In this document: in pieces, positions 5,422 to 59,221 of the stretch
Layout: each line of letters starts with the position of its first letter
Position numbering within the stretch: position 1 is the first letter of the stretch
IMG/VR virus record: IMGVR_UViG_3300035156_000206
Span: 62,001-126,000 of that record
DNA: 64,000 nt
Reading direction: 5' to 3' (one strand)
Position numbers and translations under genes: made by a program
The notes under the pieces: generated by a model
Databases searched by the model: none
The model's input: the letters and a program-made list of their open reading frames with translations, nothing else
Told to the model about the DNA's origin: nothing

Positions 5422-5463
5422 TTGCACCTAAACGTGGATCAATGTGATAATTGATCCACGTTT
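5422..5463 (+). promoter_or_regulatory. Sigma70-type promoter inside a 14-bp inverted repeat
   Basis: TTGCAC 5422-27, GATAAT 5446-51; arms 5430-43 and 5450-63 are perfect complements, followed by T-rich tract. Confidence 0.7.
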
Positions 5464-5469
5464 TCTTTT

Positions 5470-5874
5470 ATGGAGCACAGATTGGATAGTAACACAAAAA
5501 TAATCGCTACGGCCGACGAGGTCAACCAAAATGGTCGAAGGTACCTCCACTCAACTCTCGTTGAGATAGTGAACAGCCATGGCATGCGGGAAGTAATGGG
5601 AATGATTGACTCAGGAGGCACATCCCCATCATTCTCCGTTGACATCTCTCGTGTTTCTCACATTGTAAATAACCTTCGGATGGAAGGCAACCATCTCGTT
5701 GGTGACGTGAAGGTAATTCGTTCACCAGCTGGCGACATGCTCAACTCCCTGATGACAGCAAACGTCGATGTGCAATACACTCTATCAGGGTGTGGCAACG
5801 TCGAGATGATTGATGGCATCCGAACCATCACCAATTACCAACTTCGCAGTATTGATGTATCACCACTCAAATAG
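5470..5874 (+). CDS. T4 gp21-like prohead protease paralogue lacking catalytic His and Ser
   Basis: A..VNQNGRRY, SRVSH, GDVKVIRSPAG, IDV match the gp21/U9 pattern; GELxH becomes GMIDS, SSRG becomes TLSG. Confidence 0.7.
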   Translation: MEHRLDSNTKIIATADEVNQNGRRYLHSTLVEIVNSHGMREVMGMIDSGGTSPSFSVDISRVSHIVNNLRMEGNHLVGDVKVIRSPAGDMLNSLMTANVDVQYTLSGCGNVEMIDGIRTITNYQLRSIDVSPLK

Positions 5875-5881
5875 GAACTAA

Positions 5882-6106
5882 ATGGATAACCAACACCAAA
5901 AAATCAAGGGATACCGTGAACTCTCACAGGTAGAAATCGACGCTATGAACATCATCAAGGAACATGGCGTCAAGCTGGGCGTACTAATTGACAACCTCGA
6001 GATGATTGAGGGAATCGATAAGCGCTGGCTGGCCATGGCAAAGAGTGACCTGCAAAAAGGCATCATGTTTGCTGTTCGCTCTGTTGCCCAACCAACTACA
6101 TTCTAA
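5882..6106 (+). CDS. acb2: Anti-CBASS cyclic-oligonucleotide sponge Acb2
   Basis: MDNQHQKIKGYRELSQVEIDAMN..RWLAMAKSDLQKGIMFAVRSVAQPTTF closely follows the Acb2/Vs.4 pattern. Confidence 0.92.
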   Translation: MDNQHQKIKGYRELSQVEIDAMNIIKEHGVKLGVLIDNLEMIEGIDKRWLAMAKSDLQKGIMFAVRSVAQPTTF

Positions 6107-6361
6107 ATGAAGGACCCCATGCAACTCAATCACATTTGGGGATCCACGGATGGGTTAGTTCGCTACGATGAGTCAGCGGGTGCTGGCCAGAAGTATGTAC
6201 AGATTACTGAAATTGTAGTACCTACTGAATACGACAAGCAGCAGTTGCTTCTTGCATTCCGGTACATCCATGATCTCAAAGAAGCTGACAGTGACTTGAT
6301 GGCAGTGAATACGATCATGCATCTGTATACCTGTCCTGATATGATCAAGGTGGCTGGATAA
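6107..6361 (+). CDS. Hypothetical protein
   Basis: Abuts the acb2 stop; operon-coupled. Confidence 0.7.
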   Translation: MKDPMQLNHIWGSTDGLVRYDESAGAGQKYVQITEIVVPTEYDKQQLLLAFRYIHDLKEADSDLMAVNTIMHLYTCPDMIKVAG

Positions 6362-6585
6362 TGCCATTCATCCCATTTGTAGATGCCAAAGCAAAACCAC
6401 ACGAGCTCAGAGTAGCGGCTGAGCATGTGGAGACGGCGAAAATGGTCATGAAGAATCAGCTGTTAGAGATTCTTCTTGACTACCTATTGGGGAAACCCAA
6501 CAACGAACAGACAGCATATGAAGCTGACCAGATCACCATGCAGTATTGGAAAGACCTGGTAACAAGAGGAGGTATCGAATGGTAG
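6361..6585 (+). CDS. Hypothetical protein
   Basis: TAATG overlap. Confidence 0.7.
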   Translation: MPFIPFVDAKAKPHELRVAAEHVETAKMVMKNQLLEILLDYLLGKPNNEQTAYEADQITMQYWKDLVTRGGIEW

Positions 6586-6842
6586 TACTAAAAAAGATCG
6601 AGATTCGTCAGGTATTCAACCCTGACAATGGCGACGATGAAGGGTTTGGTGGCGATTACATCAAAGTGCAAGTGTTGATCGATCACGTGGTAGTTCAGAC
6701 GTATGGGGACTATTACCATGACAAGGGTGATTCCAAGGCCGAAGCATTTGTTCATGGTTATATTTACGCAATTCTGGGTTCAGATGACCGGACGAAATAC
6801 ACTGTTGAACGCACTTACGGATTAGATCGAACTGGGACCTAA
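6579..6842 (+). CDS. Hypothetical protein
   Basis: Start reassigned to ATG 6579 after GGAGG. Confidence 0.7.
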   Translation: MVVLKKIEIRQVFNPDNGDDEGFGGDYIKVQVLIDHVVVQTYGDYYHDKGDSKAEAFVHGYIYAILGSDDRTKYTVERTYGLDRTGT

Positions 6843-6849
6843 AAAGTTG

Positions 6850-6907
6850 TTGACGTACAACTGAAACAACAGGATGATATGCTCTGTTACTAACACGGAG
6901 CATATCA
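6850..6907 (+). promoter_or_regulatory. Sigma70-type promoter with RBS-covering hairpin
   Basis: TTGACG-17-GATGAT; arms TGATATGCTCTGT (6875-87) and ACGGAGCATATCA (6895-6907) cover the GGAG SD. Confidence 0.65.
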
Positions 6908-6910
6908 ACC

Positions 6911-8137
6911 ATGAACGAGCGTCAAATCCAACTGTTTTCACACTTAAAGAACCTCGTCGCAACGACTGAAGTGTTCCTTACAAAAATCCACCAACTCGAT
7001 GACTGTTTCTTCCAGGTATTTGACTACCGCCTGGCTCGATACTCTGACTTCCTGCTGCCTGATGCGCGGGAAGCACGTGGTATCATGTTCGAAGTTGACC
7101 GTGATGGTATGCCTCTGCGGTTGGCTTGCTGGATGCCTTCCAAGTTCTTCAACCTGAACGAAAATCCAATGACGATGGACCTCGACCTGTCTGATGCTAA
7201 CATCAGCGGTGTGATGGAGAAGCTTGATGGTTCAATCATCTCGACGATGATGCACAAAGGCAAGATGATCCTGAAGTCGAAGACCTCCCTGAGCTCAGAG
7301 CACGTCGCAGTGGCACAAGCATACCTCGAAAAGAACTCGTACTTCCGTGAGATCCTAGAATACCCAACAAAGAACGGCTATTCAGTTCACATGGAGCTGA
7401 CAAGTCCCGACCTGCGCATCGTGCTGGGCTACCCAGAAGTAAAGCTGACCATACTGTCGATGCGTCGTCTGTCCGATGGTGCAATGGTGAATCGTCATAA
7501 CTTCTACGATCACTTCCCATGTGATTACCGTGATGGCTTCCAACTTGATCAATGGGTCAAAGATATGGACCCAATTCAGTTTGCTGGTAAGGGCATCCCA
7601 TTTGATAACCAAGTGACTTTGTTCAAGCTGCGAGGCGTCGATCACAATGATACCATGTACGTATCGAAGTTCATTGATGCCATCAAAGCAATGGTAGGCG
7701 TGGAGGGCTACATTGTCCGATTGGTTAATGGTGAACACATCAAGATCAAGTGCGATTGGTACTGTGCATTGCATCACACCAAGGACTCAATCTCTGCACC
7801 CCGCCGTTTGTTTGAATGCATTCTGAATGGTGCTGCTGATGACCTGAAGGCTATGTTTGCAGTTGATCCAATTACGTGTGCACGCATCGTGGAAATGGAA
7901 GACAAGGTTGTTGCAAAATATAACTCGCTTGTCAACAAAGTTGAAACGTTCTACGATAGCAATCGCTCGCTCGATCGTAAGTCATACGCGATTGCAGCTA
8001 CCGCAGAAAAAGAAGACAACCTGATGGGCTTGAAAATGGCTTTGTATTTGGGCAAGACCAACGACTACAAAGAGTTCTTCTTGAAGCACCCAGAGATGTT
8101 TGGCATCAATGCAAAGGATGAAGGTTTCCCAGAATGA
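6911..8137 (+). CDS. rnlA: T4 Rnl1-type RNA ligase
   Basis: KFFNLNE, EKLDGS adenylation motif, EGYIV, KIKCDWY..LH. Confidence 0.92.
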   Translation: MNERQIQLFSHLKNLVATTEVFLTKIHQLDDCFFQVFDYRLARYSDFLLPDAREARGIMFEVDRDGMPLRLACWMPSKFFNLNENPMTMDLDLSDANISGVMEKLDGSIISTMMHKGKMILKSKTSLSSEHVAVAQAYLEKNSYFREILEYPTKNGYSVHMELTSPDLRIVLGYPEVKLTILSMRRLSDGAMVNRHNFYDHFPCDYRDGFQLDQWVKDMDPIQFAGKGIPFDNQVTLFKLRGVDHNDTMYVSKFIDAIKAMVGVEGYIVRLVNGEHIKIKCDWYCALHHTKDSISAPRRLFECILNGAADDLKAMFAVDPITCARIVEMEDKVVAKYNSLVNKVETFYDSNRSLDRKSYAIAATAEKEDNLMGLKMALYLGKTNDYKEFFLKHPEMFGINAKDEGFPE

Positions 8138-8334
8138 AAATCCTGTTCCAAGGAAAGATACCTGCAGAGCGCGAATACGTTTGCACCTGCAGTACTTGCA
8201 GCACCAAGTTTGAGTTCCAACAAAAAGAAGGAACCTACATCTCAGACCAACGAGATGGGGACTCAATATCAATCGCTTGCCCAACATGCAAAAAGACATG
8301 CTGGGTAAGTGCAAGCATGTACAAGAGGAATTAA
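8134..8334 (+). CDS. Zn-ribbon protein
   Basis: CSTC..CPTC. Confidence 0.75.
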   Translation: MKILFQGKIPAEREYVCTCSTCSTKFEFQQKEGTYISDQRDGDSISIACPTCKKTCWVSASMYKRN

Positions 8335-9950: not shown

Positions 9951-9953
9951 TAT

Positions 9954-10145: not shown

Positions 10146-10151
10146 TAACCG

Positions 10152-10197
10152 TTGACTTCAGTTGAATATTATGTTAAGGTGAACATAATATTCAACT
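10152..10197 (+). promoter_or_regulatory. Sigma70-type promoter inside a 16-bp perfect inverted repeat
   Basis: TTGACT-17-TAAGGT; AGTTGAATATTATGTT (10160-75) / AACATAATATTCAACT (10182-97). Confidence 0.7.
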
Positions 10198-10209
10198 ACA
10201 AGGGTAATC

Positions 10210-11346
10210 ATGTCAATGCATCAAGGCTACGTGTGGGATCTCGAAGTACCGCGCCGGATCGGCGATGCCAAGGTGTACATTGTTGGTGGATGGGTCCGAG
10301 ACAAGTTCATGGGTTGTCCATCACAGGACAAGGACTTCCTGGTCGTGGGTGGCACTCATGAACTGATGATCGAGCATGGTTACAAGCAAGTTGGTTTGGA
10401 CTTTCCTGTATACTTGCATCCAGAATCCGGTGATGAGTACGCACTCGCTCGCACTGAACGCAAGACTGGGCCCGGTTACGGTGGCTTCAGTACTGACAGC
10501 TCCCCTACTATTACAGTAGAAGAAGATCTGATGCGCCGTGACTTGACGATCAATGCGATGGCATTGGACCTCGAGACGGGTGAACTTATCGATCCGTGTG
10601 GTGGCCGCCACGACATGAACCGGACGTTCTTGCGCCACACAAGTGATGCATTCATGGAAGATCCAGTTCGCATCCTCCGTACGGCACGATTCGCTGCCCG
10701 CTACAACTTCAACGTTCACAAAACAACTAACGACTTCATGCGTGGCATGGTACTTGCGGGTGCCATGAACGAATTGGAGCCACATCGCGTATGGGCGGAA
10801 ATGTCACGCGGCCTGATGGAACGCAACCCACGCCAACTGTTTCAAGTCCTCGATGACTGTGAAGCACTGCGGGCAATGGAGCATCCGTGGGTTGGTGGCG
10901 TATACGCATCTGGCATCTGGATGACTGGTTACCCACTCAGCCCTCTTACCCTCCCTCAACGGTTCGCATTGATCTCCGAGCACTTCAGCCCAGAAGACTT
11001 GAAGAAGGCCCGTATTCCTACAGATTGCGCGCGGTTGAGTACAATCCTGCACGAATGGAAACACAGCGTTCCATTATATGATCAGGCAACTTCAGACACC
11101 AAGTTGAGGATGTTGGCCGGAGTAGGAGCAATTGGCAAAGATCGTGCCACTGATTTGTTCCCAAGATTCATCAGCACATTCTTGGCATGGGGTGATACAC
11201 GGTTTGATCAATTTCGTATTCCACAGATTGATCGCATGCAAACCCATGCCAATCACATTAACCTCCTTGTGCCACCAGCAGATCTCCCAGTTAAGCGGAT
11301 CCCTGAGTGGATGCTCACATCAAAGCGGGAGATTGTTCGTGGATGA
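10210..11346 (+). CDS. cca: tRNA nucleotidyltransferase (CCA-adding enzyme), no HD domain
   Basis: VGGWVRD, DKDF, DLMRRDLTINAMA, EDPVRILRTARFAAR. Confidence 0.93.
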   Translation: MSMHQGYVWDLEVPRRIGDAKVYIVGGWVRDKFMGCPSQDKDFLVVGGTHELMIEHGYKQVGLDFPVYLHPESGDEYALARTERKTGPGYGGFSTDSSPTITVEEDLMRRDLTINAMALDLETGELIDPCGGRHDMNRTFLRHTSDAFMEDPVRILRTARFAARYNFNVHKTTNDFMRGMVLAGAMNELEPHRVWAEMSRGLMERNPRQLFQVLDDCEALRAMEHPWVGGVYASGIWMTGYPLSPLTLPQRFALISEHFSPEDLKKARIPTDCARLSTILHEWKHSVPLYDQATSDTKLRMLAGVGAIGKDRATDLFPRFISTFLAWGDTRFDQFRIPQIDRMQTHANHINLLVPPADLPVKRIPEWMLTSKREIVRG

Positions 11347-12134: not shown

Positions 12135-12150
12135 TGAGGCTTTTCTTTTT
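12123..12150 (+). terminator. Rho-independent terminator
   Basis: AAAGCCTC-CTAGT-GAGGCTTT plus T tract. Confidence 0.85.
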
Positions 12151-12169
12151 CTACTTGTTGAAATAATTG

Positions 12170-15890: not shown

Positions 15891-15903
15891 ATAGTCCACA
15901 ATT

Positions 15904-15990
15904 GCGACTTGTCCCGGTACCAGCCTTCTAAGCTGATGACGTTAAATAACTGGAAGGAGTCCAGAGGTTCAATTCCTCCAGGTCGCACCA
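15904..15990 (+). tRNA. Atypical D-armless tRNA-Arg(UCU)-like RNA
   Basis: Acceptor GCGACTT/AGGTCGC, discriminator A plus encoded CCA; anticodon arm CAGC-CTTCTAA-GCTG; T arm GAGG-TTCAATT-CCTC; only 10 nt where the D arm should be; 27-nt variable region. Confidence 0.75.
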
Positions 15991-16971: not shown

Positions 16972-17042
16972 AAAATTGTTGCTGTTCTGTTTGTGTTCCT
17001 GTACGATGTGTTCTTGTTCGAAACACACCAACAGGAATACAA

Positions 17043-17606
17043 ATGGATTTCAATAAAGACTACCTCCCACAAGCCCTCCGCACCGAAAGCGTTATCGCAC
17101 CAATCACATTCAACAAGAATGTTCTCGACGGTGTTGTTGACCTTGCCATCAACGTTGGCAACCTCGCTGACCTAATCAAAAAGAATGTGGCCTATGGCAA
17201 ACCAATCCCACAAGATGTATGGGATAGTGCTCTGGCTGACATCGTCCACATGGCGACAGTTGTTACTCGCTTCGATCACACCGAGGCAACTCCAGCTTCC
17301 CCACTCAATACCCGTATCTTCCACGGCATCTTTGGTATCTTCACAGAAGCAACCGAACTGATGGAAGCATTCCAGGCAGCATCAATTGGTGGCGAAGAAC
17401 TCGACTTTGTGAACATTCAAGAAGAGATTGGCGACATCTCGTGGTACGAAGCGATTCTGCTCGATGAGATGAAAGCCAGCTTCAATGACATCAATCAGCG
17501 TGTGCTCAACAAGCTGAAGGCTCGCTACCCAGACAAGTTCTCTTCGGAGAATGCGATCACACGTGATCTCGTCACGGAACGTGCAATCCTGGAAGGCAAG
17601 GCATAA
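17043..17606 (+). CDS. MazG-like NTP pyrophosphohydrolase
   Basis: TEATEL, EEIGDISWY, N..KL.ARYP..F. Confidence 0.85.
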   Translation: MDFNKDYLPQALRTESVIAPITFNKNVLDGVVDLAINVGNLADLIKKNVAYGKPIPQDVWDSALADIVHMATVVTRFDHTEATPASPLNTRIFHGIFGIFTEATELMEAFQAASIGGEELDFVNIQEEIGDISWYEAILLDEMKASFNDINQRVLNKLKARYPDKFSSENAITRDLVTERAILEGKA

Positions 17607-17978: not shown

Positions 17979-18001
17979 AGGCATAAATAGTCATTATGCC
18001 T
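17979..18001 (+). promoter_or_regulatory. T4-like late promoter within an inverted repeat
   Basis: ATAAATA 17983-89 inside AGGCATAA/TTATGCCT. Confidence 0.65.
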
Positions 18002-18022: not shown

Positions 18023-18565
18023 ATGAAATTCGCACTTATCGAAAGCCTGGACACGATCCGTACAGAGACCGATCAAACAGCCCAGTACATTATGGAATCG
18101 GTGCTAACACACCCAGATCGCGACGTGATCATCGAGTCTGCAGACAGTGTGCTTGGTATTCTTGCTGCAAAGCTGAAAGCCGGGAAACCACTGCAACCAG
18201 CTGAAGTAGATGAATACGCCCAACTATACGCAAGTCTGTCGCTGCTGGCTCAGAACAGCGTTCGCCATGGCTACAACATTGACATCGCCACCCCAGAAGG
18301 TAAAGCCAAGTTCGGCCGCATCGTATCCAAGGTTGGTGAAGATCAGGCTGCTACCGAGAACCTGAAGAAGGTAGCCAACGTGAATGGCCAGTCGCACCTG
18401 AAGCAGATTCGTACTGACCTTGGCAACTTCCCAGCAATGGATCCAGCCAAGCAACAGATCTACATCAATTCCATCAACAAACTGCGTCTCAGCTACGAGC
18501 GCGTCAAGAACCAATTGAGCGCTGCAGTTGCTGCACCTGCTGCTCCGATGGGCGTTCCCGCTTAA
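18023..18565 (+). CDS. Late hypothetical protein, possible head-internal protein
   Basis: SD AAGGAG; N terminus rich in L/I-x-E sites. Confidence 0.75.
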   Translation: MKFALIESLDTIRTETDQTAQYIMESVLTHPDRDVIIESADSVLGILAAKLKAGKPLQPAEVDEYAQLYASLSLLAQNSVRHGYNIDIATPEGKAKFGRIVSKVGEDQAATENLKKVANVNGQSHLKQIRTDLGNFPAMDPAKQQIYINSINKLRLSYERVKNQLSAAVAAPAAPMGVPA

Positions 18566-18570
18566 ACTCG

Positions 18571-18624
18571 TTGACTTTTCATCTCACTTACAGTATAATG
18601 AATTATTGTCTACTGATAAGTGAG
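18571..18624 (+). promoter_or_regulatory. Sigma70-type promoter with RBS-covering hairpin
   Basis: TTGACT-17-TATAAT; CTCACTTACAGTA (18583-95) pairs with TACTG-A-TAAGTGAG (18611-24). Confidence 0.75.
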
Positions 18625-18631
18625 GTGTCCC

Positions 18632-18817
18632 ATGAGTACCGGTTTGAATAGGAATTCGGATGGCAGTGGCACTTCCGAATATGATACACAGTACGCCAAA
18701 GAGTTTCCTGATATTTACATATGCGATCGACCGCGAATCGTTCAGGAAGCCGTAACGTACATGTCAGATCAGCACATGGACAACGAATTTGCACTTATAA
18801 AAAAGCTCCTAAGTTAG
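18632..18817 (+). CDS. Small hypothetical protein
   Basis: Own promoter, SD GAGG, own terminator. Confidence 0.7.
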   Translation: MSTGLNRNSDGSGTSEYDTQYAKEFPDIYICDRPRIVQEAVTYMSDQHMDNEFALIKKLLS

Positions 18818-20878: not shown

Positions 20879-20978
20879 GTACCTGGGCACCCCTGAAAAA
20901 TAAAGGTTGACTAGTCTGTTTCGCTCCTGTATAAATACCCCTGTTGTTGTTATTATTAAACACTTAGGAGTATTTAAT

Positions 20979-21746
20979 ATGAGTCGTAAAGCAGGGCGTA
21001 CCCGGGCAAAACCCACACGTGAAGTTGATGTCAGATTTGAACAGTTTGCAGCCGCTGCTGAAGGTCCGCAGCGTAAGAAAAAGTGGACAAAGCATGACGT
21101 AAAACCTATCCATCCCCTCACAGAAAACCAAAAAAGCATGTTTGTGCATTTCTATCAAGGCGACAATCTCGCTGCGATTGGATCAGCTGGCACAGGCAAG
21201 TCCTTCCTCAGTTGCTTCTTAGCAATCAGTGATGTAGTCGATCACACCAAAGACCAAAAGCAAGTTATCCTAGTTCGCTCGGCTGTTCAGTCGCGTGACG
21301 TTGGTTTCATGCCTGGTACTCTGGAAGAAAAGAACTCGTACTACGAAACGCCTTATCGGGACATCTTTGGTGAACTGTTTGGCCGTGCTTCGACGTACGA
21401 TGACATGAAAGAAGCTGGTATGATTCAATTCATGACCACCTCATTCATTCGTGGACTAACATGGGACGATTCGATCATTGTGATCGATGAAGCACAGAAT
21501 ATGACTTGGGAAGAGATCAACACGATCATGACTCGAGTTGGTAAGAATAGCCGCATTATCGTGTGCGGTGACGTCAAGCAAAACGACCTCATCAAAAAGA
21601 AGAGCGAAGTTAGTGGCATTACCAAGATGTTCGCTGTTCTAAAGCGTATGAACGACTTCTCCACAATCACCTTCACCCGCGACGACATCGTTCGTAGCGA
21701 ATTTGTCAAGCAATGGATCATTGCTACAGAATCGGTTGAAGATTAA
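20979..21746 (+). CDS. phoH: PhoH-family ATPase
   Basis: GSAGTGKS, LVRS.V, GFMPG, RGLTWD..IIVIDEAQN, R.G.NSR..CGD..Q.D; upstream TTGACT and TATAAATA. Confidence 0.93.
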   Translation: MSRKAGRTRAKPTREVDVRFEQFAAAAEGPQRKKKWTKHDVKPIHPLTENQKSMFVHFYQGDNLAAIGSAGTGKSFLSCFLAISDVVDHTKDQKQVILVRSAVQSRDVGFMPGTLEEKNSYYETPYRDIFGELFGRASTYDDMKEAGMIQFMTTSFIRGLTWDDSIIVIDEAQNMTWEEINTIMTRVGKNSRIIVCGDVKQNDLIKKKSEVSGITKMFAVLKRMNDFSTITFTRDDIVRSEFVKQWIIATESVED

Positions 21747-22144: not shown

Positions 22145-22313
22145 AATAGTGTTCCTAACCGTTGTGATCGTATTTATAGGCCCTGACTGAATAACCAAAA
22201 ATTGTTCTGGTACACACGGCAAAAGTGCTCGTACAGTGGGAATCGTCCCAAAAGTATAGGTCTATTCCCATGTTCGACTAAATACTGGCAATACTTTTTG
22301 GGATGCATATATC

Positions 22314-22583
22314 ATGGCAGAAACAATTATCGCGTACAGCGGGCATATCCGCTACTGGACATACATTCTTGTGACGGTCTTCTTATTTGGCAGCTTGTTA
22401 GGTGCGGCAGGGGTGGTTAGGCTTAAAAACCTACCAGCTCTTACTTTGATCGATAGTTCTACCAAGGCTCAAATCAATACGGCGGTGAACGAAAATGGTA
22501 ACCGCTTGATGTTACTCGAACGCCGTGTGACTGATCTGGAAGACAAGAACAAGACACGTGCTAACCCGGCGAACATCAAATAA
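22314..22583 (+). CDS. Membrane protein with TM plus coiled coil
   Basis: One TM; TAAATA upstream at 22279-84. Confidence 0.7.
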   Translation: MAETIIAYSGHIRYWTYILVTVFLFGSLLGAAGVVRLKNLPALTLIDSSTKAQINTAVNENGNRLMLLERRVTDLEDKNKTRANPANIK

Positions 22584-22923: not shown

Positions 22924-23006
22924 AAAACCGTACAACTGAAGTTGCCTGTTCTCTTCTGAGACCGATTGGTGTATGATGTATCACCATCGTAACTTAGAAG
23001 AGAACC

Positions 23007-23234
23007 ATGTCTTACTCCCCAGCAGACTCCACCGAAAACAAGATTGACAAGTCGAAGACCTACGTCTTTGAAAATGTCGAAGTGCGCCTTACGGGCCGCA
23101 TCGCAAAGAAACCCTCCACTGTGAACAACAAGATCATACTGATCCAGTATGAGGTCACTCCTGCAGACGAAGAAGGCATCACTTGGAAGAAGTGGGCCAA
23201 AGAATCTGATCTGTTCACCATCTCCGAAGAATAA
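23007..23234 (+). CDS. Hypothetical protein
   Basis: VEVRLTGR.A.K motif; operon context. Confidence 0.75.
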   Translation: MSYSPADSTENKIDKSKTYVFENVEVRLTGRIAKKPSTVNNKIILIQYEVTPADEEGITWKKWAKESDLFTISEE

Positions 23235-32110: not shown

Positions 32111-32235
32111 GGTCCTGTTCTGCCCGGCCTGATGTTTGTTGTATGATCCTGATCTATAAGAGGATCTGTTCATTGTTCTGCTCACTAAATATGTGTTCGC
32201 AGAGAAGGAACATCCAATGAACACAGAACAGGACC
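32111..32235 (+). promoter_or_regulatory. Multi-helix leader with late promoter in its apical loop
   Basis: 12-bp (32111-22/32224-35) and 9-bp (32167-75/32215-23) perfect helices; TAAATA 32186-91 in the loop. Confidence 0.7.
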
Positions 32236-32239
32236 CGTC

Positions 32240-32755
32240 ATGACCTTACTTGAACTATCCCCTCCAGTTAATACCACAGGCACATATGCTGCCGTAACCT
32301 TCTCTCCAAAGACAATCGCTAAGCTTATACGCTTTTGCGAGGAAAACGGCGTAAAGAACGTTTTAAACGCTGACAAATTCCATACAACGCTAATTTACAG
32401 TCGTAAAGAAATGCCAGATTATAAAGCAGCTGGTGACCTAAAAACCAAACTAATCGGTGAGCCTGAAGAGCTGTTGATCTGGAAGACGCGAAGCGAAGAC
32501 AAAGATAAGAAGCCCTCCAACTGCTTGGTATTGAAGTACAAATGTCCGGCCCTGGTGGCACGTCACAATCAGCTGATGAAAGAACATGAAGGCACCTACG
32601 ACTTTGATGAGTTTACTCCACACATCACTCTGTCGTACAATATCGGTGATGATTCGATCGACCATCTCCAAGAGAAGCTGAAGGAGTTTGGGGAGATCGA
32701 GATTGACCACGAGTATACCGAGAAACTAGATCTAAACTGGGCAACGAAAAAATGA
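32240..32755 (+). CDS. acb1: Anti-CBASS nuclease Acb1 (T4 gp57B-like 2H phosphodiesterase)
   Basis: GTYAAV, FHTTLIYSR, LVL....L..RH..L...GTYDFDEFTPHITLSY: two HxT motifs. Confidence 0.9.
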   Translation: MTLLELSPPVNTTGTYAAVTFSPKTIAKLIRFCEENGVKNVLNADKFHTTLIYSRKEMPDYKAAGDLKTKLIGEPEELLIWKTRSEDKDKKPSNCLVLKYKCPALVARHNQLMKEHEGTYDFDEFTPHITLSYNIGDDSIDHLQEKLKEFGEIEIDHEYTEKLDLNWATKK

Positions 32756-40859: not shown

Positions 40860-40887
40860 AATACACGCTAAATAATGCGTGTATTTT
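40860..40887 (+). promoter_or_regulatory. Hairpin with TAAATA in its loop (terminator and/or late promoter)
   Basis: AATACACGC-TAAATAAT-GCGTGTATT-TT. Confidence 0.65.
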
Positions 40888-42368: not shown

Positions 42369-43064
42369 TTATGGGAATGACGAAATGTACTTCTTACGTC
42401 TGATGAAAAACACATTTCGGACGTAACCTCGGTTGATTTCAAAGGCTGATTGTCCGTATCCATGCTGTTTGATACGTGTCTTGAAGCTGTACTTCTCTAC
42501 ATTGTCAAACCACTTATCTGGATCACATCCCGGCATGGCTGTACAAAGCGTGCGATCTTGGATAACACCACGCAATCCTCCGTTGTACCCGGACATCATA
42601 AACGCATAGTGCTCAATGTCAGTTGTTGGCCACTTTATGCTGTTGTATAGACCTTTGTCCATCAGCACAACGGTCTTCAACTGATACGAAGGATCATAGC
42701 GGTTTTCCCACTTCCAAGCGCGAAGTTCAGGGAACCTTGCCTTCATTTCTTCAAAGTTGTTGAACCGAACAGTACCATCCTTGCGGTAAGCAATAGTCAA
42801 CTGTCCTAGTCCAAAGCCATACTCCACAGGCGTCTTCAGTTCTGTGGTTGGATTCCAACATTTCTTGCTCTTCAGGGAAGCACAACTCTCCTGCTCGATC
42901 TGAGCAGCAATCAGTGACTGACTTTGCATAGATGGCCAAATATCAACCATCACACGCTTCAGATCAGGCAAATACTGTACCGCACGTTCAGGCAGAGTTT
43001 GCGGTACGGAGTTCGTGCAGAAACCTAAGGCTACAACAACTACGAGTGCCTTTAGGATGTTCAT
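42369..43064 (-). CDS. Lytic transglycosylase, probable signal-bearing endolysin
   Basis: QIEQES catalytic Glu, GLGQ, GYNGG, RGYV; hydrophobic N terminus. Confidence 0.85.
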   Translation of the reverse strand: MNILKALVVVVALGFCTNSVPQTLPERAVQYLPDLKRVMVDIWPSMQSQSLIAAQIEQESCASLKSKKCWNPTTELKTPVEYGFGLGQLTIAYRKDGTVRFNNFEEMKARFPELRAWKWENRYDPSYQLKTVVLMDKGLYNSIKWPTTDIEHYAFMMSGYNGGLRGVIQDRTLCTAMPGCDPDKWFDNVEKYSFKTRIKQHGYGQSAFEINRGYVRNVFFIRRKKYISSFP

Positions 43065-43066: not shown

Positions 43067-43369
43067 TTAGCTCAGTAGTACTACACCGGCAACAACGAAG
43101 ACCGATAGGATGATGCTGAAGCTGAGAAACACTACAGCGGCTGACATTGGTGTTTCCAAAGCACGTTCTGCATAGTGACGCAGATTAATGTAAGGAAACA
43201 TGATTTTACGCAGGATATGCGACGCGGCCGCGAGAGCGATTGTGATACCCAACGAGTAGATCACGACGAGGCTGCCATGGTCTGGAATGAGAATCATCCC
43301 AGCTATAAGCAACATTGGGATAATACGTTTGGATTCTTTTTTGAGGTAGTTAAAGATACTGTTGAGCAT
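43067..43369 (-). CDS. Putative holin
   Basis: 100 aa, three TM segments, directly upstream of endolysin; late promoter upstream. Confidence 0.6.
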   Translation of the reverse strand: MLNSIFNYLKKESKRIIPMLLIAGMILIPDHGSLVVIYSLGITIALAAASHILRKIMFPYINLRHYAERALETPMSAAVVFLSFSIILSVFVVAGVVLLS

Positions 43370-43438
43370 AAGGGTCCTTGCTAAGGTTGTGTGGCTATTT
43401 ATGACCCTTAGTTTGGACGAATACTATACCCTAATAAA

Positions 43439-49975: not shown

Positions 49976-50133
49976 TACAGGTCCGGGTTAGTTACAATCA
50001 CGTCCATTCTAACCGATGAAACATGTTCGAGTCAAGAAATTTGTTCAACTATTTATTCCGCTCTCAAGTGGCGCATAAATAACCTTGTAAGGAAACACAT
50101 CTTGCGCCTTTTCAACAACTTGGGAACCTATTT

Positions 50134-53705: not shown

Positions 53706-53782
53706 TCTTAGGCATAAATACATCTTAAATGGCACTTCTCGAAGCGCCTTCAATAAATAAGCCATACATTAAGAGGACGATT

Positions 53783-54985
53783 ATGACCCATCAACACAAA
53801 AGTAACACTTGCCCTGGATGCAAAGCAGTCGAAAATTACCGCTGCATGTCCAAGGACAAAGTAATGACCACTGAAACTTGCATCAAGTGCAAGGCCAAGG
53901 CTATCACCGAAGAAGCAGCAGCTGGCTCGTCAAGTGCTACTGCTGTTGCTGGCTTTCAAGGACGCATGTTCATGGGTGCAAAGAAGCTAGCCCGCCGTAA
54001 GGTGCCAGGCGAAGCTGCTCCAATCCCTATCATCCAATACTCAAACAAGAAGCTGTCTGAAGCAACTCGTCATTCGTTTAGCGCGTTCCTCGGTGAAGGC
54101 GATGACAACTTTGACTCGGTGGATGTGATCTCAAAACTGTCACAGAACTCCAAAGTTGCTGATGAGCTAGATGGTGATGAATTGGCAGTATTTGGTATGG
54201 AAGCAGATGACGGATCGATTACCAAGGTATACATCCCACACGAGCAAGCCAAAGAATTCGAGCGTGCTCTGGGCGATCGTCTGAAGGATACCAAAGATGC
54301 AACTGGCGAGGAAGAGATCGCAGGCATTCTATTTGACCTCAAGGATCGCTTCAAGATTGTTGACGTTAAGTGGCCAACAGTGCAAGAAGATGAAGAACAA
54401 GCTCCTGCTGCTGGTGCCGCTCCTGGCGCTGACCCAATGGCTCCTGGTGCACCTGGTGCTGATCCGATGGCTGCTCCTGGCACAGATCCAATGGCTGCTC
54501 CTGGTGCTGTAGGCCCTGATGGTGCTCCTGTTGACCCAATGGCAGATCCAAATGCTGACCCAATGGCTCCTGGTGCCGCTGCTCCTGCAGACACTGGCGA
54601 CATGATTACCCAGATCTTGGATATGTTGCGTCAAGATGCTGAAGCTCGCAAGGCTGATGCCGAAGCCAAGACTGCTGATGCAAAAGCCCGTGAAGCCGAT
54701 GCTGCTGCTCGTACCGCTGCTACCAAACTGCAAGGTGAGGAAGAAGTGATGGATGCAGAAGCCCACTTCAAGGAGAAGAAGGAAGAAAAGAAAGAGGGCG
54801 AACGTCTCAAGATGATCGCACGCTTCCGTCAAGAGACCAAGATGGATCAGGACTCACGTGCACCAATGCCAGCTCCTAAAGAGCAGGAACAAGGGCCAAA
54901 TGACGAAGAACCTAAGGCTGAGGAAGAAGAGTCTGTAACCATGACCCGTCAGACCCTCCTGAATATTTTACGTGGGGGTCGCTAA
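53783..54985 (+). CDS. Acidic late protein with GADPMA repeats
   Basis: Two ATAAATA motifs upstream; SD AGAGGA; about seven DPM(A) units; charged coiled-coil tail. Confidence 0.75.
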   Translation: MTHQHKSNTCPGCKAVENYRCMSKDKVMTTETCIKCKAKAITEEAAAGSSSATAVAGFQGRMFMGAKKLARRKVPGEAAPIPIIQYSNKKLSEATRHSFSAFLGEGDDNFDSVDVISKLSQNSKVADELDGDELAVFGMEADDGSITKVYIPHEQAKEFERALGDRLKDTKDATGEEEIAGILFDLKDRFKIVDVKWPTVQEDEEQAPAAGAAPGADPMAPGAPGADPMAAPGTDPMAAPGAVGPDGAPVDPMADPNADPMAPGAAAPADTGDMITQILDMLRQDAEARKADAEAKTADAKAREADAAARTAATKLQGEEEVMDAEAHFKEKKEEKKEGERLKMIARFRQETKMDQDSRAPMPAPKEQEQGPNDEEPKAEEEESVTMTRQTLLNILRGGR

Positions 54986-54986
54986 T

Positions 54987-55951: not shown

Positions 55952-56654
55952 GCGTTACTACCCAGCAGAAGAAGCAGAGAAGGAAGACCCAAAGGATAGC
56001 CATGTTGGTGTTAATCTAGACATCACTCTGACTGGCTTCAATGGTGACCAACCGATCCGTGCAAAGATTGACACTGGTGCTCAGGCATCCAGTCTCCACG
56101 GAGAGAACATCAAAGTGGTATCAAGCGATGTAGAAGGATCCAGCTACGTATCGTTCTCGTACGGCGAGTTCCAGTACAAGATGCGCGTGGATAGCTTCCA
56201 AGCGATCACCAGTGCTGATGGCGGAACCGTCAACCGGCCTGTTGTGTGTATTTCAGCACGCATCCACGGTAAGTACATCGAAGGTGCTAGATTCAACCTG
56301 AACGATCGTGGAAACATGGACTACCCCGTTCTGATCGGTCTAGACTTGATTAAGACGGCTGGACTGACTATCGATCCAAGTATGTCAGAGATGGAAGTAT
56401 CCTTTGGGCCAAACGGCTTTGAAAAGGTAGAAGGATCTGATGAATCTGACGCCGTCCCAGATGCTGGGAGTGATTCCGTTGACATTTCATCTGATGTAAA
56501 GGATAATGATGTTTACAGTGATATTTCGCTCGCAAAGATCATGACTGAATGGTTGGCGGCAAATAAACACAAGACAGTGCAAGAAGTGTTTGCACATTTG
56601 TTTTTAATCGACGGCCCTAAACCAGCCACAGACTTTAATGACCCAACAAAGTAA
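55926..56654 (+). CDS. Retropepsin-like protease (RimK-associated putative protease family)
   Basis: AKIDTGA..SSLH, RP.V, L.DR..M.YPVLIG. Confidence 0.85.
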   Translation: MNQEKPKAERYYPAEEAEKEDPKDSHVGVNLDITLTGFNGDQPIRAKIDTGAQASSLHGENIKVVSSDVEGSSYVSFSYGEFQYKMRVDSFQAITSADGGTVNRPVVCISARIHGKYIEGARFNLNDRGNMDYPVLIGLDLIKTAGLTIDPSMSEMEVSFGPNGFEKVEGSDESDAVPDAGSDSVDISSDVKDNDVYSDISLAKIMTEWLAANKHKTVQEVFAHLFLIDGPKPATDFNDPTK

Positions 56655-57264
56655 ATCGCCCTTCTATGTGATCCCCGAATTCATTTCGCCCTTGATGTGC
56701 GAAGAAATTGTGGATCAGCTAGATTTCATTGTGCCAGACGTTAGCCCGTCTGGCGCACTTTTGCCGTCTGTCAAGACAGAGGCTGATTATGAAGCTTACC
56801 TGTTTGGTCAGTTTCTGAAGTATAAGGATTCGATTGCTGCCTACTTCGACAGCGATCACAGAGCAACATCAGAATTCACCTTCACGTGGTACCCAACTGG
56901 TGCCCATGAGCCAATGCACGCCGAAAACAGCATCTACCAAAATGGAAAATGGTTTCGTGTGAAAGATCGTGACCTCACGTGTGTATTGTTCCTCTCGGAC
57001 TACCAGGACAAACCACCATTTGATGATGAGTACGAGGTCTATGGTGGGAAGCTTGAATTCCCACAGCATGGCTTCGGTTTCAATCCACAGCGGGGTACTC
57101 TCGTTGTGTTTCCAAGCGTCCCACAGTTTGTCAATGGGATCGCACCCATCTTAGCAGGTAGCTTATATCTGGCTAAGTTTCACTTCGCTACAAAGACTCC
57201 GCTCATGTACGATCCTCGGAAGTTTCCTGGAAACTACACGACTTGGCTGAGAGAATTCGAGTAG
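56638..57264 (+). CDS. 2OG-Fe(II) oxygenase
   Basis: HAEN, RDLT..LFL.D, GG.L.F, G.LV.FPS; distal His apparently absent (FVNG). Confidence 0.75.
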   Translation: MTQQSKSPFYVIPEFISPLMCEEIVDQLDFIVPDVSPSGALLPSVKTEADYEAYLFGQFLKYKDSIAAYFDSDHRATSEFTFTWYPTGAHEPMHAENSIYQNGKWFRVKDRDLTCVLFLSDYQDKPPFDDEYEVYGGKLEFPQHGFGFNPQRGTLVVFPSVPQFVNGIAPILAGSLYLAKFHFATKTPLMYDPRKFPGNYTTWLREFE

Positions 57265-57284
57265 CATAACAATTAGGAGGTAGT

Positions 57285-57959
57285 ATGTCAACTCTTATTA
57301 CTAAGAGGTCGCAATTCCTTTGCGCCAAATTTTTGATAGGTGTTACGTTAGTTACATCATTAACCACATTTCCAGGTATGGTCCACTCGGAAACAACCCA
57401 AATTAACGACCTGTTTGAAACATTCGTAGCAAAGTTCCGGCTTACGAATGTGCAAGTGACCAATCTCAAGTTGGTTAAGGAACGAGCCAAAAACCCAGAG
57501 GCGCTTCAAGGTATCATGTTGCAGGAGAGCGGTGCTGGACTCAACACTCGATCGTCTGGTGGTTGTCACGGACCATTCCAGATCAAGACGAGTACCGCGG
57601 TGGGTTTCCTGAAAGGGAACGACGAAGTACGCACTTTGTACTTTGGGAATAGTAATCCTACGCCTAAGCTAGTTGCATCGAAACTGAAAAATGATGTACT
57701 ATTCAGTATCGACGTTGCTGACGGGTTATACGCAGGATCACTAGAAAGAAGCAAGGACCATAATCGTGCACTCATGGCTTACAACCAAGGAGAACGCAGA
57801 ATGATGATCGAGCGGAATCCTACAAGATTCAAGTATGTACGCGAAGTATCAGCGAAGATTCAGAACATTATTAAGCCTTTCAATGCTGCACTGGCTCAAC
57901 CTGCTCCTCCCGCTGATATGGTGACAACCTTAGAAACCATCAAGGAGGTGCTCTTCTAA
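57285..57959 (+). CDS. SLT-family lytic transglycosylase with N-terminal TM or signal
   Basis: QES, GPFQI, AYNQG. Confidence 0.8.
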   Translation: MSTLITKRSQFLCAKFLIGVTLVTSLTTFPGMVHSETTQINDLFETFVAKFRLTNVQVTNLKLVKERAKNPEALQGIMLQESGAGLNTRSSGGCHGPFQIKTSTAVGFLKGNDEVRTLYFGNSNPTPKLVASKLKNDVLFSIDVADGLYAGSLERSKDHNRALMAYNQGERRMMIERNPTRFKYVREVSAKIQNIIKPFNAALAQPAPPADMVTTLETIKEVLF

Positions 57960-57967
57960 GGAACAGT

Positions 57968-59155
57968 ATGTCACGTCTCACCCAAGTCAAACATGGCTTA
58001 AAGCAAATCTCCCAAGGCACCCAGCGTGTCTTGGGTCTCACGAAGATCATGTCTCTTCTGAGCCCTTATTTCAAATCCCTATCGAAAAATACCTCTGTTG
58101 GTTACGCCCAGATTGCTGAAGGCGTCAAGCACATCTTTGGTCAAACTAAGGACCAGCTCCGTGACAAGTGGCTCCACCGTCTGATGGTCGACATGGATGA
58201 AAAGAAGCGTAAAGATTGGTTCTCCGTCTATCAAAACTGGTATCGTTATTACCACGATGAAGCAGCCGGTCGTCTCCTCCATGAGCGATCCAGTCGTTGT
58301 CCGTTTACAGCCAAAGAGTTTGTTGCTTTGGCGCATGGCATCATGCAAGGTCTTGGCACCTCCAAGCTAATTGGAGTACAACCTTTCATTGCATCCCATG
58401 GGCTTGTGTATCGGATGGGATTTGTTATGCCTGAGGTGGAACCGGTTGAACAGGTAGAAAATCCATCAGCTCTTGATCATGTTCCAGCGAATCCTCATTC
58501 ATTTGAGTTCCAGGGCAGGTTCGAAATCACCTCCAATACAATCGAGACTCGCTATAGGAAACTGGCGGCCCGGGTACACTACGATGCTTCACAAGTAACA
58601 GAATCAGATCAGAAGCAGTTGATCCTAGCATTTTTGGCATCGGACATCGCTATGGATATCGATCAAGAACACCTGTCCAACATCGAAGATTTGGCTATTC
58701 CAACCGAAGATTTGCCAGACCACTACCTAGCAGTAGGCATTTGCAAGGCTTCTAACCAAATCGCACAACGTGCCCGTCGTGGTGCTGGCAACTGGGCGAT
58801 CGTTAGTGCTAAAGCAAAAGCCGTGTTGCAGGAAAGCCGAGCAGTAAAATGGTTTGATCAGCCTACCGAAAGTGGCATTTTGACTCACATTGGTACTCTC
58901 AATGATACTATTGCCTTGTACGAGCGTAATGATCTGAACCCTGGCGAGCCGTATGGCAGTGATGTGTTGGTTGGGTACAAAGGATCGTCTGATGTCGATG
59001 CTGGTTACATATTTGCTCCACAGATTCCCGCTGCGATGTCTGGGGTGCTGATTGACCCCAACACATTCCAGCCAGTGTGGTCAATGATGACACGCTATGG
59101 TACCTACAAGTCTAAAGATGCCGAGAACTACTTCACAAAGTTCAATCTGATCTAA
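57968..59155 (+). CDS. Truncated T4 gp23-like capsid protein paralogue with novel N terminus
   Basis: IGVQP..G.V..M, RKL.A, I..DIDQE, N.IAQ..RRGAGNW..VS, VGYKG...DAG...P..P, DP.TFQP...TRYG. Confidence 0.8.
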   Translation: MSRLTQVKHGLKQISQGTQRVLGLTKIMSLLSPYFKSLSKNTSVGYAQIAEGVKHIFGQTKDQLRDKWLHRLMVDMDEKKRKDWFSVYQNWYRYYHDEAAGRLLHERSSRCPFTAKEFVALAHGIMQGLGTSKLIGVQPFIASHGLVYRMGFVMPEVEPVEQVENPSALDHVPANPHSFEFQGRFEITSNTIETRYRKLAARVHYDASQVTESDQKQLILAFLASDIAMDIDQEHLSNIEDLAIPTEDLPDHYLAVGICKASNQIAQRARRGAGNWAIVSAKAKAVLQESRAVKWFDQPTESGILTHIGTLNDTIALYERNDLNPGEPYGSDVLVGYKGSSDVDAGYIFAPQIPAAMSGVLIDPNTFQPVWSMMTRYGTYKSKDAENYFTKFNLI

Positions 59156-59158
59156 TTG

Positions 59159-59221
59159 TTGCATTTGTTCGTGTTCTGTTCTATACTGTGTGTTCTCAAT
59201 AAACAACACCTGTATAGGACA
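59159..59221 (+). promoter_or_regulatory. Sigma70-type promoter with RBS-covering hairpin
   Basis: TTGCAT-17-TATACT; 59177-86 pairs with 59212-21, which contains AGGA. Confidence 0.75.

What the first reader, a model, noticed from the sequence alone, without database searches (positions are those of the whole stretch)
5422..59221. Window-wide design: promoters embedded in inverted repeats that often cover the downstream RBS
Seen at sigma70-type promoters: 5430-63 (14 bp, -10 in loop), 6875-6907 (13 bp, covers GGAG), 10160-97 (16 bp perfect, -10 in loop), 18583-624 (covers GAG), 59177-221 (covers AGGA), and GGTTAG/CTAACC upstream of dCMP deaminase on the minus strand. Seen at late ATAAATA motifs: 15885-98, 17979-18001, 22244-305, 32111-235, 40860-85, 43369-410, 53723-74. 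Established: T4 silences genes e, soc and 49 on read-through transcripts with such hairpins. Inference: here the logic extends to early promoters too, so read-through mRNA is translationally muted and only the cognate promoter gives an open RBS. Alternatively the repeats are operators or cruciforms.
Basis: partly seen in the sequence, partly recalled or inferred. Interest (0 to 1): 0.62.

Follow-up and report, generated by a model that had tools for sequence, protein, structure and literature searches.

The report
Promoters nested in RBS-masking hairpins
In this uncultivated T4-like jumbo phage, about one promoter in five, early-type as well as late-type, sits inside an RNA hairpin predicted to hide the next gene's ribosome binding site on transcripts arriving from upstream; T4 is known to do this at late genes, and here (and in T4 itself by the same test) it also appears at early promoters.

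Summary
The window is part of a 292-kb phage contig from a biocrust metagenome, distantly T4-like, with a gp55-like late sigma factor. Most of the listed inverted repeats are real. Five of six early-type sites and about three of seven late-type sites are more than chance. Two (5430-63, 40860-85) look like terminators, and the dCMP-deaminase repeat and 15885-98 are trivial.

Genome-wide, sequence upstream of the predicted transcription start pairs with the Shine-Dalgarno/start region at 21 of 116 promoters beyond every shuffle. The same test gives 0 of 75 at operon-internal starts, 1 of 38 in promoter-less gaps and 0 of 24 in divergent gaps. Stem mismatches are G:T 15 versus A:C 1, so the helices act as sense-strand RNA, not as operators or cruciforms. 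Arm sequences are unique to each site.

The best reading is T4 e/soc/49-type masking of the RBS on read-through RNA, with the nested promoter giving an open RBS. "Window-wide design" overstates it, because only about a quarter of promoters show it. It is also not special to this phage. The same pipeline gives the same frequency in T4, including the early promoters of regB, modB, alc and alt.-3. Early promoters containing stem-loops are already published as PeSLs. No transcription starts or translation data exist for this phage.

The parts
5422..5463 (+). Sigma70-type promoter (-35 TTGCAC 5422-27, -10 GATAAT 5446-51) inside a perfect 14-bp hairpin (5430-43 / 5450-63) followed by TCTTTT. This is a composite terminator-promoter of PeSL type. 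It masks the start only if ATG 5470 is the real start.
   Evidence: (top terminator-like hit). dG_open 2.8 short vs 12.9 long, 0/60 shuffles for ATG 5470; 27/60 for TTG 5482.
6850..6913 (+). Promoter (-35 TTGACG 6850-55, -10 GATGAT 6873-78). The 5' arm (6875-87) overlaps the -10. The 3' arm (6895-6907) holds GGAG 6897-6900. ATG 6911 starts RNA ligase 1.
   Evidence: dG_open 3.5 short, 11.6 long, 5.3 with shuffled upstream, 1/60. Pfam RNA_lig_T4_1.
10152..10212 (+). Promoter (-35 TTGACT, -10 TAAGGT 10175-80) with the -10 in the loop of a perfect 16-bp hairpin (10160-75 / 10182-97). The stem ends 4 nt before AAGGG. ATG 10210 starts a PolyA_pol-head nucleotidyltransferase.
   Evidence: dG_open 6.2 / 10.1 / 6.6, 4/60, borderline. 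Pfam.
16979..17047 (+). Promoter (-35 TTGCTG, -10 TACGAT 17002-07). A 17-bp stem (16986-17002 / 17031-17047) covers AGGA and the ATG (17043) of a MazG-domain protein.
   Evidence: dG_open 3.2 / 21.9 / 9.0, 0/60. Pfam MazG.
18571..18634 (+). Strong promoter (TTGACT-17-TATAAT). The 5' arm (18583-95) overlaps the -10 and the 3' arm (18611-24) overlaps GAGG. ATG 18632. The upstream gene (18023-18565) has a late-type promoter.
   Evidence: dG_open 4.4 / 19.3 / 9.0, 0/60.
20907..20981 (+). TTGACT-N17-TATAAATA, a sigma70-type -10 overlapping a late motif. The promoter region pairs with AGGAG..ATG of PhoH. Borderline.
   Evidence: dG_open 4.2 / 10.8 / 7.4, 3/60. Pfam PhoH.
22244..22316 (+). Long-range repeat with late motif ACTAAATA in the loop, upstream of ATG 22314. 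Marginal.
   Evidence: 6/300. dG_open 3.5 / 11.2 / 7.8, 8/60.
22948..23009 (+). A 13-bp stem (22948-60 / 22993-23005) abuts ATG 23007, with a -10-like TATGAT in the loop. No clear -35.
   Evidence: dG_open 3.1 / 13.7 / 5.7, 1/60.
32111..32242 (+). A 125-nt structure closed by GGTCCTGTTCTG / CAGAACAGGACC. Late motif ACTAAATA (32184-91) lies inside, and the 3' arm covers the AGGA of Acb1 (ATG 32240).
   Evidence: dG_open 3.4 short, 16.0 long, 8.6 shuffled, 0/60 with 100 nt of upstream sequence. Pfam Acb1.
40860..40885 (+). A 9-10 bp hairpin with CTAAATA in the loop, directly after the topoisomerase gene and followed by TT-rich sequence. Terminator-like, and it does not mask the RBS.
   Evidence: dG_open 4.9 / 4.2, 54/60.
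43367..43410 (-). Late motif CATAAATA between arms TAAGGGTC / GACCCTTA. The 3' arm covers AAGGA and the A of the ATG of a 100-aa gene that precedes the endolysin gene. Its position is analogous to T4 gene e.
   Evidence: dG_open 3.6 / 12.4 / 8.1, 2/60. Endolysin PHROG.
59159..59227 (+). Promoter (-35 TTGCAT, -10 TATACT 59182-87). The 5' arm (59177-86) overlaps the -10 and the 3' arm (59212-21) holds AGGA. ATG 59225. The upstream operon starts at late motifs (53715/53754) and ends with a major-head-like gene.
   Evidence: dG_open 2.3 / 20.4 / 8.8, 0/60. Head-like PHROG. Syntenic hairpins in XacN1 and RAS14.
17979..18001 (+). An 8-bp hairpin around late motif CATAAATA, after a terminator. It does not reach the RBS.
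   Evidence: dG_open 2.4 / 1.9, 59/60.
53715..53785 (+). Two late motifs and a weak interrupted repeat (53723-74). No RBS masking beyond chance.
   Evidence: 12/300. 24/60 and 22/60.
49983..50016 (-). GGTTAG / CTAACC at the dCMP deaminase promoter. This is a chance-level 6-bp repeat and not part of the feature.
   Evidence: z -0.2. 36/60. dCMP deaminase PHROG.

Best explanation
About a fifth to a quarter of the phage's promoters lie inside an RNA helix. This holds for sigma70-type early promoters and for gp55-type late promoters ([A/C]TAAATA). The 5' arm of the helix is the promoter spacer or -10 region, and the 3' arm is the Shine-Dalgarno/start region of the gene 20-30 nt downstream.

Transcripts arriving from the co-directional upstream gene contain both arms, so the helix forms and the RBS is occluded. 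Transcripts that start at the nested promoter lack the 5' arm and have an open RBS. Translation of that gene is thereby tied to its own promoter.

Shown here: the helices, their enrichment, their RNA-type pairing, and their restriction to promoters with upstream co-directional genes.
Inferred: the TSS positions, the existence of read-through, and the effect on translation.

A minority of sites (5430-63, 40860-85) instead look like terminators that overlap a promoter.
For: 1. For each gene, the cognate upstream segment is the best pairing partner of its leader among 83 promoters in 9 cases, where 1 is expected.
2. The energy needed to open the RBS is 4.2 kcal on the short RNA, 8.5 on the long RNA and 6.4 with shuffled upstream sequence (early, n=70). 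14 early and 7 of 46 late promoters exceed all 30 shuffles.
3. Controls give 0/75 at operon-internal starts (Fisher p 1.8e-5), 1/38 in promoter-less gaps against 21/87 in promoter-bearing gaps, and 0/24 in divergent gaps against 21/92 in tandem gaps (p 0.006).
4. A repeat search blind to mismatch type finds interior mismatches G:T 15 vs A:C 1. Shuffles give 170 vs 188. The sense strand is more structured than the antisense strand (p 0.003).
5. 12 of 13 significant early repeats straddle the predicted TSS and 11 of 13 cover positions -16..+3.
6. 24 of 26 lack a T-run.
7. The same pipeline recovers T4 gene e as a positive control and gives similar numbers in T4, with 0/59 at T4 operon-internal starts.
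8. The mechanism is experimentally established for T4 e, soc, 49 and I-TevI (PMC3014915 section 29; PMC2988022 section 12).
9. The syntenic gene upstream of the DNA polymerase gene in XacN1 and RAS14 has the same layout with different arm sequences.
10. The T4 regB hairpin keeps pairing in Mosigvirus through 3 changes on both sides.
11. A gp55 homologue is present in the genome.
Against: - No TSS, RNA or translation data exist for this phage. The only run holding it is DNA.
- Promoters and starts come from my own consensus scans and gene caller.
- Leaders are so short (median 24-26 nt) that any helix straddling the TSS nearly has to touch the RBS. Coverage of the RBS therefore does not by itself separate masking from attenuation.
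- Only a minority of promoters show it.
- There is no significant anticorrelation with upstream terminators.
- No close relatives were found, so there is no orthologous covariation for the window's own sites.
- Several listed late sites do not mask the RBS.
Confidence: 0.6

Rival explanations
1. PeSL-type attenuation. The stem-loops stop or attenuate transcription coming from upstream, so that each promoter drives an insulated unit. Covering the RBS is a side effect of the very short leaders.
For: RB49/phi1 PeSL stem-loops sit between the -35 and -10 or over the -10, and one of them reduced downstream lacZ like a strong terminator (PMC2839356). 5430-63 is the top terminator-like hit, and 40860-85 has a T-rich tail. 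Restriction to tandem gaps fits this model equally well. The genome's left end carries a repeated PeSL-like cassette.
Against: 24 of 26 significant repeats have no T-run after the 3' arm. In most of them the 3' arm lies downstream of the TSS and on the SD/ATG, not inside the promoter. Arms in the window are unique, not a conserved cassette. There is no significant relation to the presence of ordinary terminators.
Confidence: 0.2
2. RNA processing or stability signals. The hairpins are RNase III-type cleavage sites or 3'-end protectors for the upstream message.
For: They are sense-strand RNA helices of 10-19 bp at gene boundaries in tandem gene arrays. T7-like phages use such sites (own knowledge).
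Against: This model gives no reason for the strict association with promoters (21/87 vs 1/38 gaps), nor for the TSS falling between the arms. Most stems are shorter than typical RNase III substrates (own knowledge). Not tested directly.
Confidence: 0.08
3. DNA-level elements: operators for a dimeric regulator, or cruciforms that modulate promoter opening.
For: Two sites (5430-63, 10160-97) are perfect palindromes centred on the -10.
Against: Interior mismatches are G:T 15 vs A:C 1, which only helps one RNA (or single) strand. Every arm sequence is unique in the genome, so there is no shared operator. Hairpins are absent from promoters in divergent gaps. Loops reach 40-100 nt.
Confidence: 0.04
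4. Chance or composition artefact of AT-rich intergenic DNA and conserved promoter hexamers.
For: Some listed sites are at chance level: the dCMP deaminase repeat, 15885-98 and 53723-74.
Against: Dinucleotide shuffles, non-cognate promoter swaps, operon-internal starts, promoter-less gaps and divergent gaps all fail to reproduce the signal.
Confidence: 0.03

Closest known systems
T4 RBS-sequestering hairpins with a nested late promoter (genes e, soc, 49, I-TevI/II/III, segB; Aeh1 mobE)
   Same: The helix hides the SD and/or AUG on transcripts from upstream. The promoter lies in or just after the 5' arm, so its own transcript cannot form the helix. Leaders are short. The dG_open values match: T4 e is 4.1 short and 16.6 long, and the window's top sites are 2-4 short and 19-22 long. 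The site at 43367-43410 even precedes the lysis genes.
   Different: The reviews read here describe the known cases as all late genes (PMC2988022 section 12). Here the clearest cases are sigma70-type early promoters (6850, 16979, 18571, 59159), and about a fifth of all promoters are involved. The organism is an uncultivated 292-kb phage whose DNA polymerase is about 43% identical to XacN1-group jumbo phages.
PeSLs (promoter-early stem-loops) of RB49/phi1, PST/T4 and nt-1/KVP40
   Same: [quoted passage not shown] The stem is often between the -35 and -10 or over the -10. G-T pairs were noted. The proposed role is to handle transcription from upstream (PMC2839356, PMC4122927). The repeated cassette at the left genome end and 5430-63 fit this description.
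   Different: PeSL stems are compact, conserved in sequence (G-run/C-run), interpreted as terminators and proposed as recombination substrates. The window's stems are unique sequences, mostly lack T-runs, and place their 3' arm on the RBS.
Rho-independent terminators overlapping the next promoter
   Same: 5430-5463 and 40860-40885 have a stable stem, a T-rich tail, and a position directly after a stop codon.
   Different: The promoter's -10 or late motif lies in the loop. Most other sites have no T-run.

Membership tests
T4-type RBS-sequestering hairpin with nested promoter | A helix includes the Shine-Dalgarno sequence and/or start codon | tested here: met
   11/13 significant early and 5/13 late repeats overlap -16..+3. 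In the window this holds at 6850, 16979, 18571, 22948, 32111, 43401 and 59159.
T4-type RBS-sequestering hairpin with nested promoter | The promoter is placed so that its transcript starts inside the structure and lacks the 5' arm | tested here: inconclusive
   The predicted TSS (7 nt after the -10, or 6 nt after TAAATA) falls between the arms in 12/13 early and 9/13 late cases. No TSS has been mapped, and no RNA run exists.
T4-type RBS-sequestering hairpin with nested promoter | Longer transcripts from upstream promoters run through the site | tested here: inconclusive
   Indirect only. All 21 significant cases have a co-directional upstream gene (21/92 vs 0/24 divergent). At 6850, 10152, 16979, 18571 and 59159 the stop codon is 4-8 nt from the -35 with no terminator between. 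The genome-wide relation to terminators is not significant.
T4-type RBS-sequestering hairpin with nested promoter | Translation is low from long transcripts and high from promoter-proximal transcripts | not testable with these tools
   Only computed opening energies are available.
T4-type RBS-sequestering hairpin with nested promoter | The nested promoter is a gp55-type late promoter (all published cases) | tested here: not met
   The best cases carry TTGAC-N17-TAnnnT promoters. Late-motif cases also exist (32111, 43401). A gp55 homologue is present.
PeSL (promoter-early stem-loop cassette) | A sigma70-like promoter plus a stem-loop within one intergenic cassette ending in SD and ATG | tested here: met
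PeSL (promoter-early stem-loop cassette) | The stem-loop works as a transcription terminator or attenuator | tested here: inconclusive
   Terminator-like anatomy is seen only at 5430-63 and 40860-85. 24/26 significant repeats lack a T-run. Function was not assayed.
PeSL (promoter-early stem-loop cassette) | A repeated, sequence-conserved cassette that can recombine | tested here: not met
   The window's arms occur once each. The feature is met only outside the window, by at least 13 cassette copies at genome positions 1.3-17.7 kb.
Operator palindromes of a phage repressor | The same half-site sequence recurs at several promoters | tested here: not met
   The arms are all different and unique. 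The G:T over A:C bias argues for RNA.

The most novel reading that the evidence does not exclude
Promoter-nested RBS masking may be a general, two-way timing device of T4-like phages and not a special trick for a few late genes. Early (sigma70-type) promoters are nested in the same way, so that early proteins stop being made once their own promoter is shut off, even though middle or late read-through RNA still covers the gene. Candidate cases are regB, modB, alc and alt.-3 in T4, and RNA ligase 1, MazG and the gene upstream of the DNA polymerase gene here. This would add an unrecognised layer to early shut-off, and it could be tested directly in T4.
Probability: 0.35. Interest if true: 0.6.

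Novelty: new variant of a known kind. Interest (0 to 1): 0.45.

Why it matters
- If the reading is right, translation in these phages depends on which promoter made the RNA, for early genes as well as late ones. That helps explain how densely packed, co-directional gene arrays with interleaved early and late promoters keep their timing.
- It gives a sequence-only way to place promoters and likely transcription starts in uncultivated phage genomes.
- It points to a concrete, cheap experiment in T4. Mutating the promoter spacer arm of regB, modB or alc would test whether early shut-off has a translational component built into the promoters.
- It offers compact promoter-coupled insulators for synthetic operons.
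- The mechanism itself is not new.

Tried and rejected
- Close relatives for orthologous covariation. RNA ligase was searched in viral contigs and DNA polymerase in metagenome contigs.
- RNA evidence. The only run holding the sequence is the DNA metagenome.
- Anti-SD 4-mers in promoter spacers are not enriched over dinucleotide shuffles (25 vs 25.9 and 27 vs 27.9). This test was uninformative.
- Anticorrelation between occluding hairpins and upstream terminators. The trend is as expected for early promoters (3/20 vs 16/50) but not significant (p 0.23), and there is none for late promoters.
- A T-run after the 3' arm against RBS coverage shows no relation, because almost none have T-runs.
- Rfam and ARAGORN on the window found no known RNA family at gathering score, so the hairpins are not known structured RNAs.
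- tblastn of T4 MotA, AsiA, RegA, RegB, Alc, gp33 and gp45 against the genome found only gp55 and gp44. This is a weak method and not evidence of absence.
- My first gene caller truncated several starts. Tests were therefore built on promoter-anchored start finding, and the first run of the reverse test timed out.
- The large protein searches, structure tools and alternative genetic codes were not needed and not used.

Full report
**What the sequence is.** The window is bases 62,001-126,000 of a single 291,967-bp contig. The only public run that holds it is a biocrust metagenome DNA run, and no RNA run exists. Its DNA polymerase is about 43% identical to those of the jumbo phages XacN1, Xoo-sp13, RsoM2USA and CM1/RAS14, and about 30% identical to T4-group polymerases. 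The window carries nucleotide-metabolism and replication genes:
- NAMPT, RNA ligase 1, a PolyA_pol-head nucleotidyltransferase, MazG, PhoH and thymidylate synthase
- NAD-dependent DNA ligase, Acb1, primase, topoisomerase II, helicase, RNR, dCMP deaminase and DNA polymerase

It also holds small late islands with tail fibre, endolysin and a head-like protein. A gp55-like late sigma gene lies elsewhere on the contig.

**Promoters.** Sigma70-type matches are concentrated in non-coding DNA. At my score of 15 or more, 103 of 128 lie in the 14% of the genome that is non-coding, and the tool's own scan finds the same top sites. TAAATA is also concentrated there (80 of 119), usually as [A/C]TAAATA. Both classes sit very close to the next start codon. 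The median predicted leader is 26 nt for early promoters and 24 nt for late ones.

**Checking the listed repeats.** All of them exist at the stated coordinates.
- The early-type sites 5430-63, 6875-6907, 10160-97, 18583-624 and 59177-221 are strong stems.
- The GGTTAG/CTAACC pair at dCMP deaminase is at chance level (z -0.2).
- 15885-98 is a 4-5 bp stem.
- Among late-type sites, 32111-235 and 40860-85 are strong, 17979-18001 and 22244-305 moderate, and 43369-410 and 53723-74 weak.
- Two strong sites had been missed: 16986-17047 (17 bp over the AGGA and ATG of MazG) and 22948-23005.

**Is it more than chance?** I ran four tests on all promoters of the contig.
- Swap test. The 45 nt upstream of a predicted TSS pair best with their own leader, out of 83 possible partners, in 9 cases where 1 is expected. 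This control keeps the promoter hexamers intact.
- Folding test. Promoter-to-start segments fold better than dinucleotide shuffles (mean z -1.69, with 21% below -3). Coding controls give -0.13 and 1% (p 1.5e-7).
- Blind repeat search. A gapless search that ignores mismatch type beats all 40 shuffles at 11/70 early and 8/46 late promoters, where 1.7 and 1.1 are expected.
- RBS opening energy. The computed cost of opening positions -16..+3 is 4.2 kcal on RNA starting at the predicted TSS, 8.5 kcal on RNA extended 50 nt upstream, and 6.4 kcal when that upstream part is shuffled (early promoters). For late promoters the values are 3.7, 7.6 and 5.9. Altogether 21 of 116 promoters exceed every one of 30 shuffles.

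**Controls that localise the effect.**
- Operon-internal starts with a good SD give 0/75, and there the natural upstream sequence is less occluding than shuffles (Fisher p 1.8e-5).
- Among genes with a gap of at least 45 nt upstream, occlusion occurs in 21/87 gaps with a predicted promoter and 1/38 without (p 0.004).
- All 21 significant cases have a co-directional upstream gene (21/92). None of the 24 promoters in divergent gaps shows it (p 0.006). This is what a device acting on read-through RNA predicts, and not what a promoter-intrinsic DNA feature predicts.

**RNA or DNA?** In the blind repeats, interior mismatches are G:T 15 against A:C 1. Over all best repeats the counts are 30 against 8, and shuffled sequences give 170 against 188. 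The sense strand folds better than the antisense strand (p 0.003). Every arm in the window is unique in the genome. Operators and cruciforms are therefore unlikely. A single-stranded sense DNA hairpin cannot be formally excluded.

**Anatomy.** Of the 13 significant early repeats, 12 straddle the predicted TSS and 11 cover the RBS window. For late repeats the figures are 9 and 5 of 13. The 5' arm usually lies in the spacer and -10 region, and the 3' arm on the SD and start codon. Only 2 of 26 are followed by a T-run.

Per-site results in the window:
- Masking is supported at 6850, 16979, 18571, 59159, 22948 and 32111, and at 5422 if ATG 5470 is the start.
- It is borderline at 10152, 20907, 43401 and 22279.
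- It is absent at 17984, 15890, 40870, 53715/53754 and dCMP deaminase.
- 5430-63 is the top terminator-like hit of the scan, and 40860-85 has a T-rich tail. These two are better described as terminators overlapping a promoter.
- At 18571 and 59159 the upstream genes follow late motifs. At 59159 the upstream operon ends in a head-like gene. So the masked gene is an early-type unit lying downstream of late transcription.

**Comparison with T4 by the same pipeline.** T4 (AF158101) gives 4/17 early and 6/23 late promoters beyond all shuffles, and 0/59 at operon-internal starts.
- Gene e, the textbook case, is recovered (4.1 short, 16.6 long), as is I-TevII.
- The early cases are regB, modB, alt.-3 and alc.
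- The regB helix persists in Mosigvirus phages with different arm sequences, with 3 pairs changed on both sides.
- The frequency in the window's phage is therefore about the same as in T4.

**Distant relatives.** The gene upstream of the DNA polymerase gene in XacN1 (31% identical to the gene at 59225) and the syntenic gene in RAS14 have a -10-like hexamer in or next to a 5' arm, and an SD-covering 3' arm. Their arm sequences are unrelated to each other. Opening energies are 2.0/10.2/5.8 and 0.8/9.0/5.3, with 5 and 6 of 100 shuffles reaching the observed value. Each result is modest on its own, but together they are consistent with conservation of the layout.

**What is known.**
- T4 reviews document RBS sequestration with a nested late promoter for e, soc, 49, I-TevI/II/III, segB and Aeh1 mobE. 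They state that the genes so regulated are all late genes (PMC3014915 section 29; PMC2988022 section 12).
- The regB section of the review mentions an early promoter and self-cleavage in the SD, but no helix.
- Stem-loops within early promoters of T4-like phages are published as PeSLs. Their stems most often lie between the -35 and -10 or over the -10, G-T pairs were noted, and they are interpreted as terminators and recombination cassettes (PMC2839356, PMC4122927).
- The contig's left end has at least 13 copies of such a conserved cassette.

**Verdict.** The mechanism is the known T4 one. The extension to sigma70-type promoters is a variant that the literature read here does not describe as RBS masking. 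It is shared with T4 and is not a peculiarity of this phage. The attenuator (PeSL) reading remains a live rival, because short leaders force any TSS-straddling helix onto the RBS. Everything concerning TSSs, read-through and translation is inferred.

Noticed in passing
window 15903-15987 (+): A tRNA-like element with a 7-bp acceptor stem, a T-arm GGTTCAATTCC and an end ..GCACCA, but no D-arm. It gives a sub-threshold Rfam tRNA-Sec match (31.8 bits, gathering score 47, E 6e-5), and ARAGORN reports nothing. The listed 'late motif' 15885-98 lies 5 nt upstream of it, and TTAAATAA at 15943 lies inside its variable arm.
   Followed up: partly
G000:C1 1,300-17,800 (minus strand), outside the window: At least 13 copies of a 50-70 nt early-promoter cassette (TTGACA-tttttccaaaaGTCAG-TATAAT-gattacaTCAACTGACGAA..GGAG..ATG). 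It has a small inverted repeat between the -35 and -10, placed in front of small ORFs. This is PeSL-like.
   Followed up: partly
window 20907-20937: TTGACT-N17-TATAAATA upstream of PhoH. A sigma70-type promoter whose -10 overlaps a full T4-type late motif, suggesting one site is used both early and late.
   Followed up: no
window 16979-17007, 59159-59187; genome 217646, 217970, 244314, 257680: A subset of weaker promoters shares a TTGC(A/T)T or TTGATC -35 and (T)GTTC repeats in the spacer. This may be a separate (middle?) promoter class. No MotA or AsiA was found by tblastn.
   Followed up: no
T4 AF158101: starts 62740 (regB), 13130 (modB), 123032 (alt.-3), about 136275 (alc); loci L005, L011-L015: T4 early promoters are nested in RBS-occluding helices by the same test. 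alt.-3 and alc share a near-identical cassette. The regB helix is kept in Mosigvirus with 3 changes on both sides. The T4 reviews read here do not mention these helices.
   Followed up: partly
window 43067-43369 and 42369-43064 (-): A 100-aa gene followed by an endolysin gene, behind a late motif whose flanks pair with the RBS. This is the same arrangement as T4 lysozyme gene e. Whether the small gene is a holin was not examined.
   Followed up: no
window 5470-5874 (+): The start is ambiguous. ATG 5470 has no SD and lies 6 nt after the hairpin, while in-frame TTG 5482 has GGAG at the right distance. There is a weak sub-threshold Pfam hit to the prohead core protease family (23 bits, cut-off 27).
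   Followed up: no
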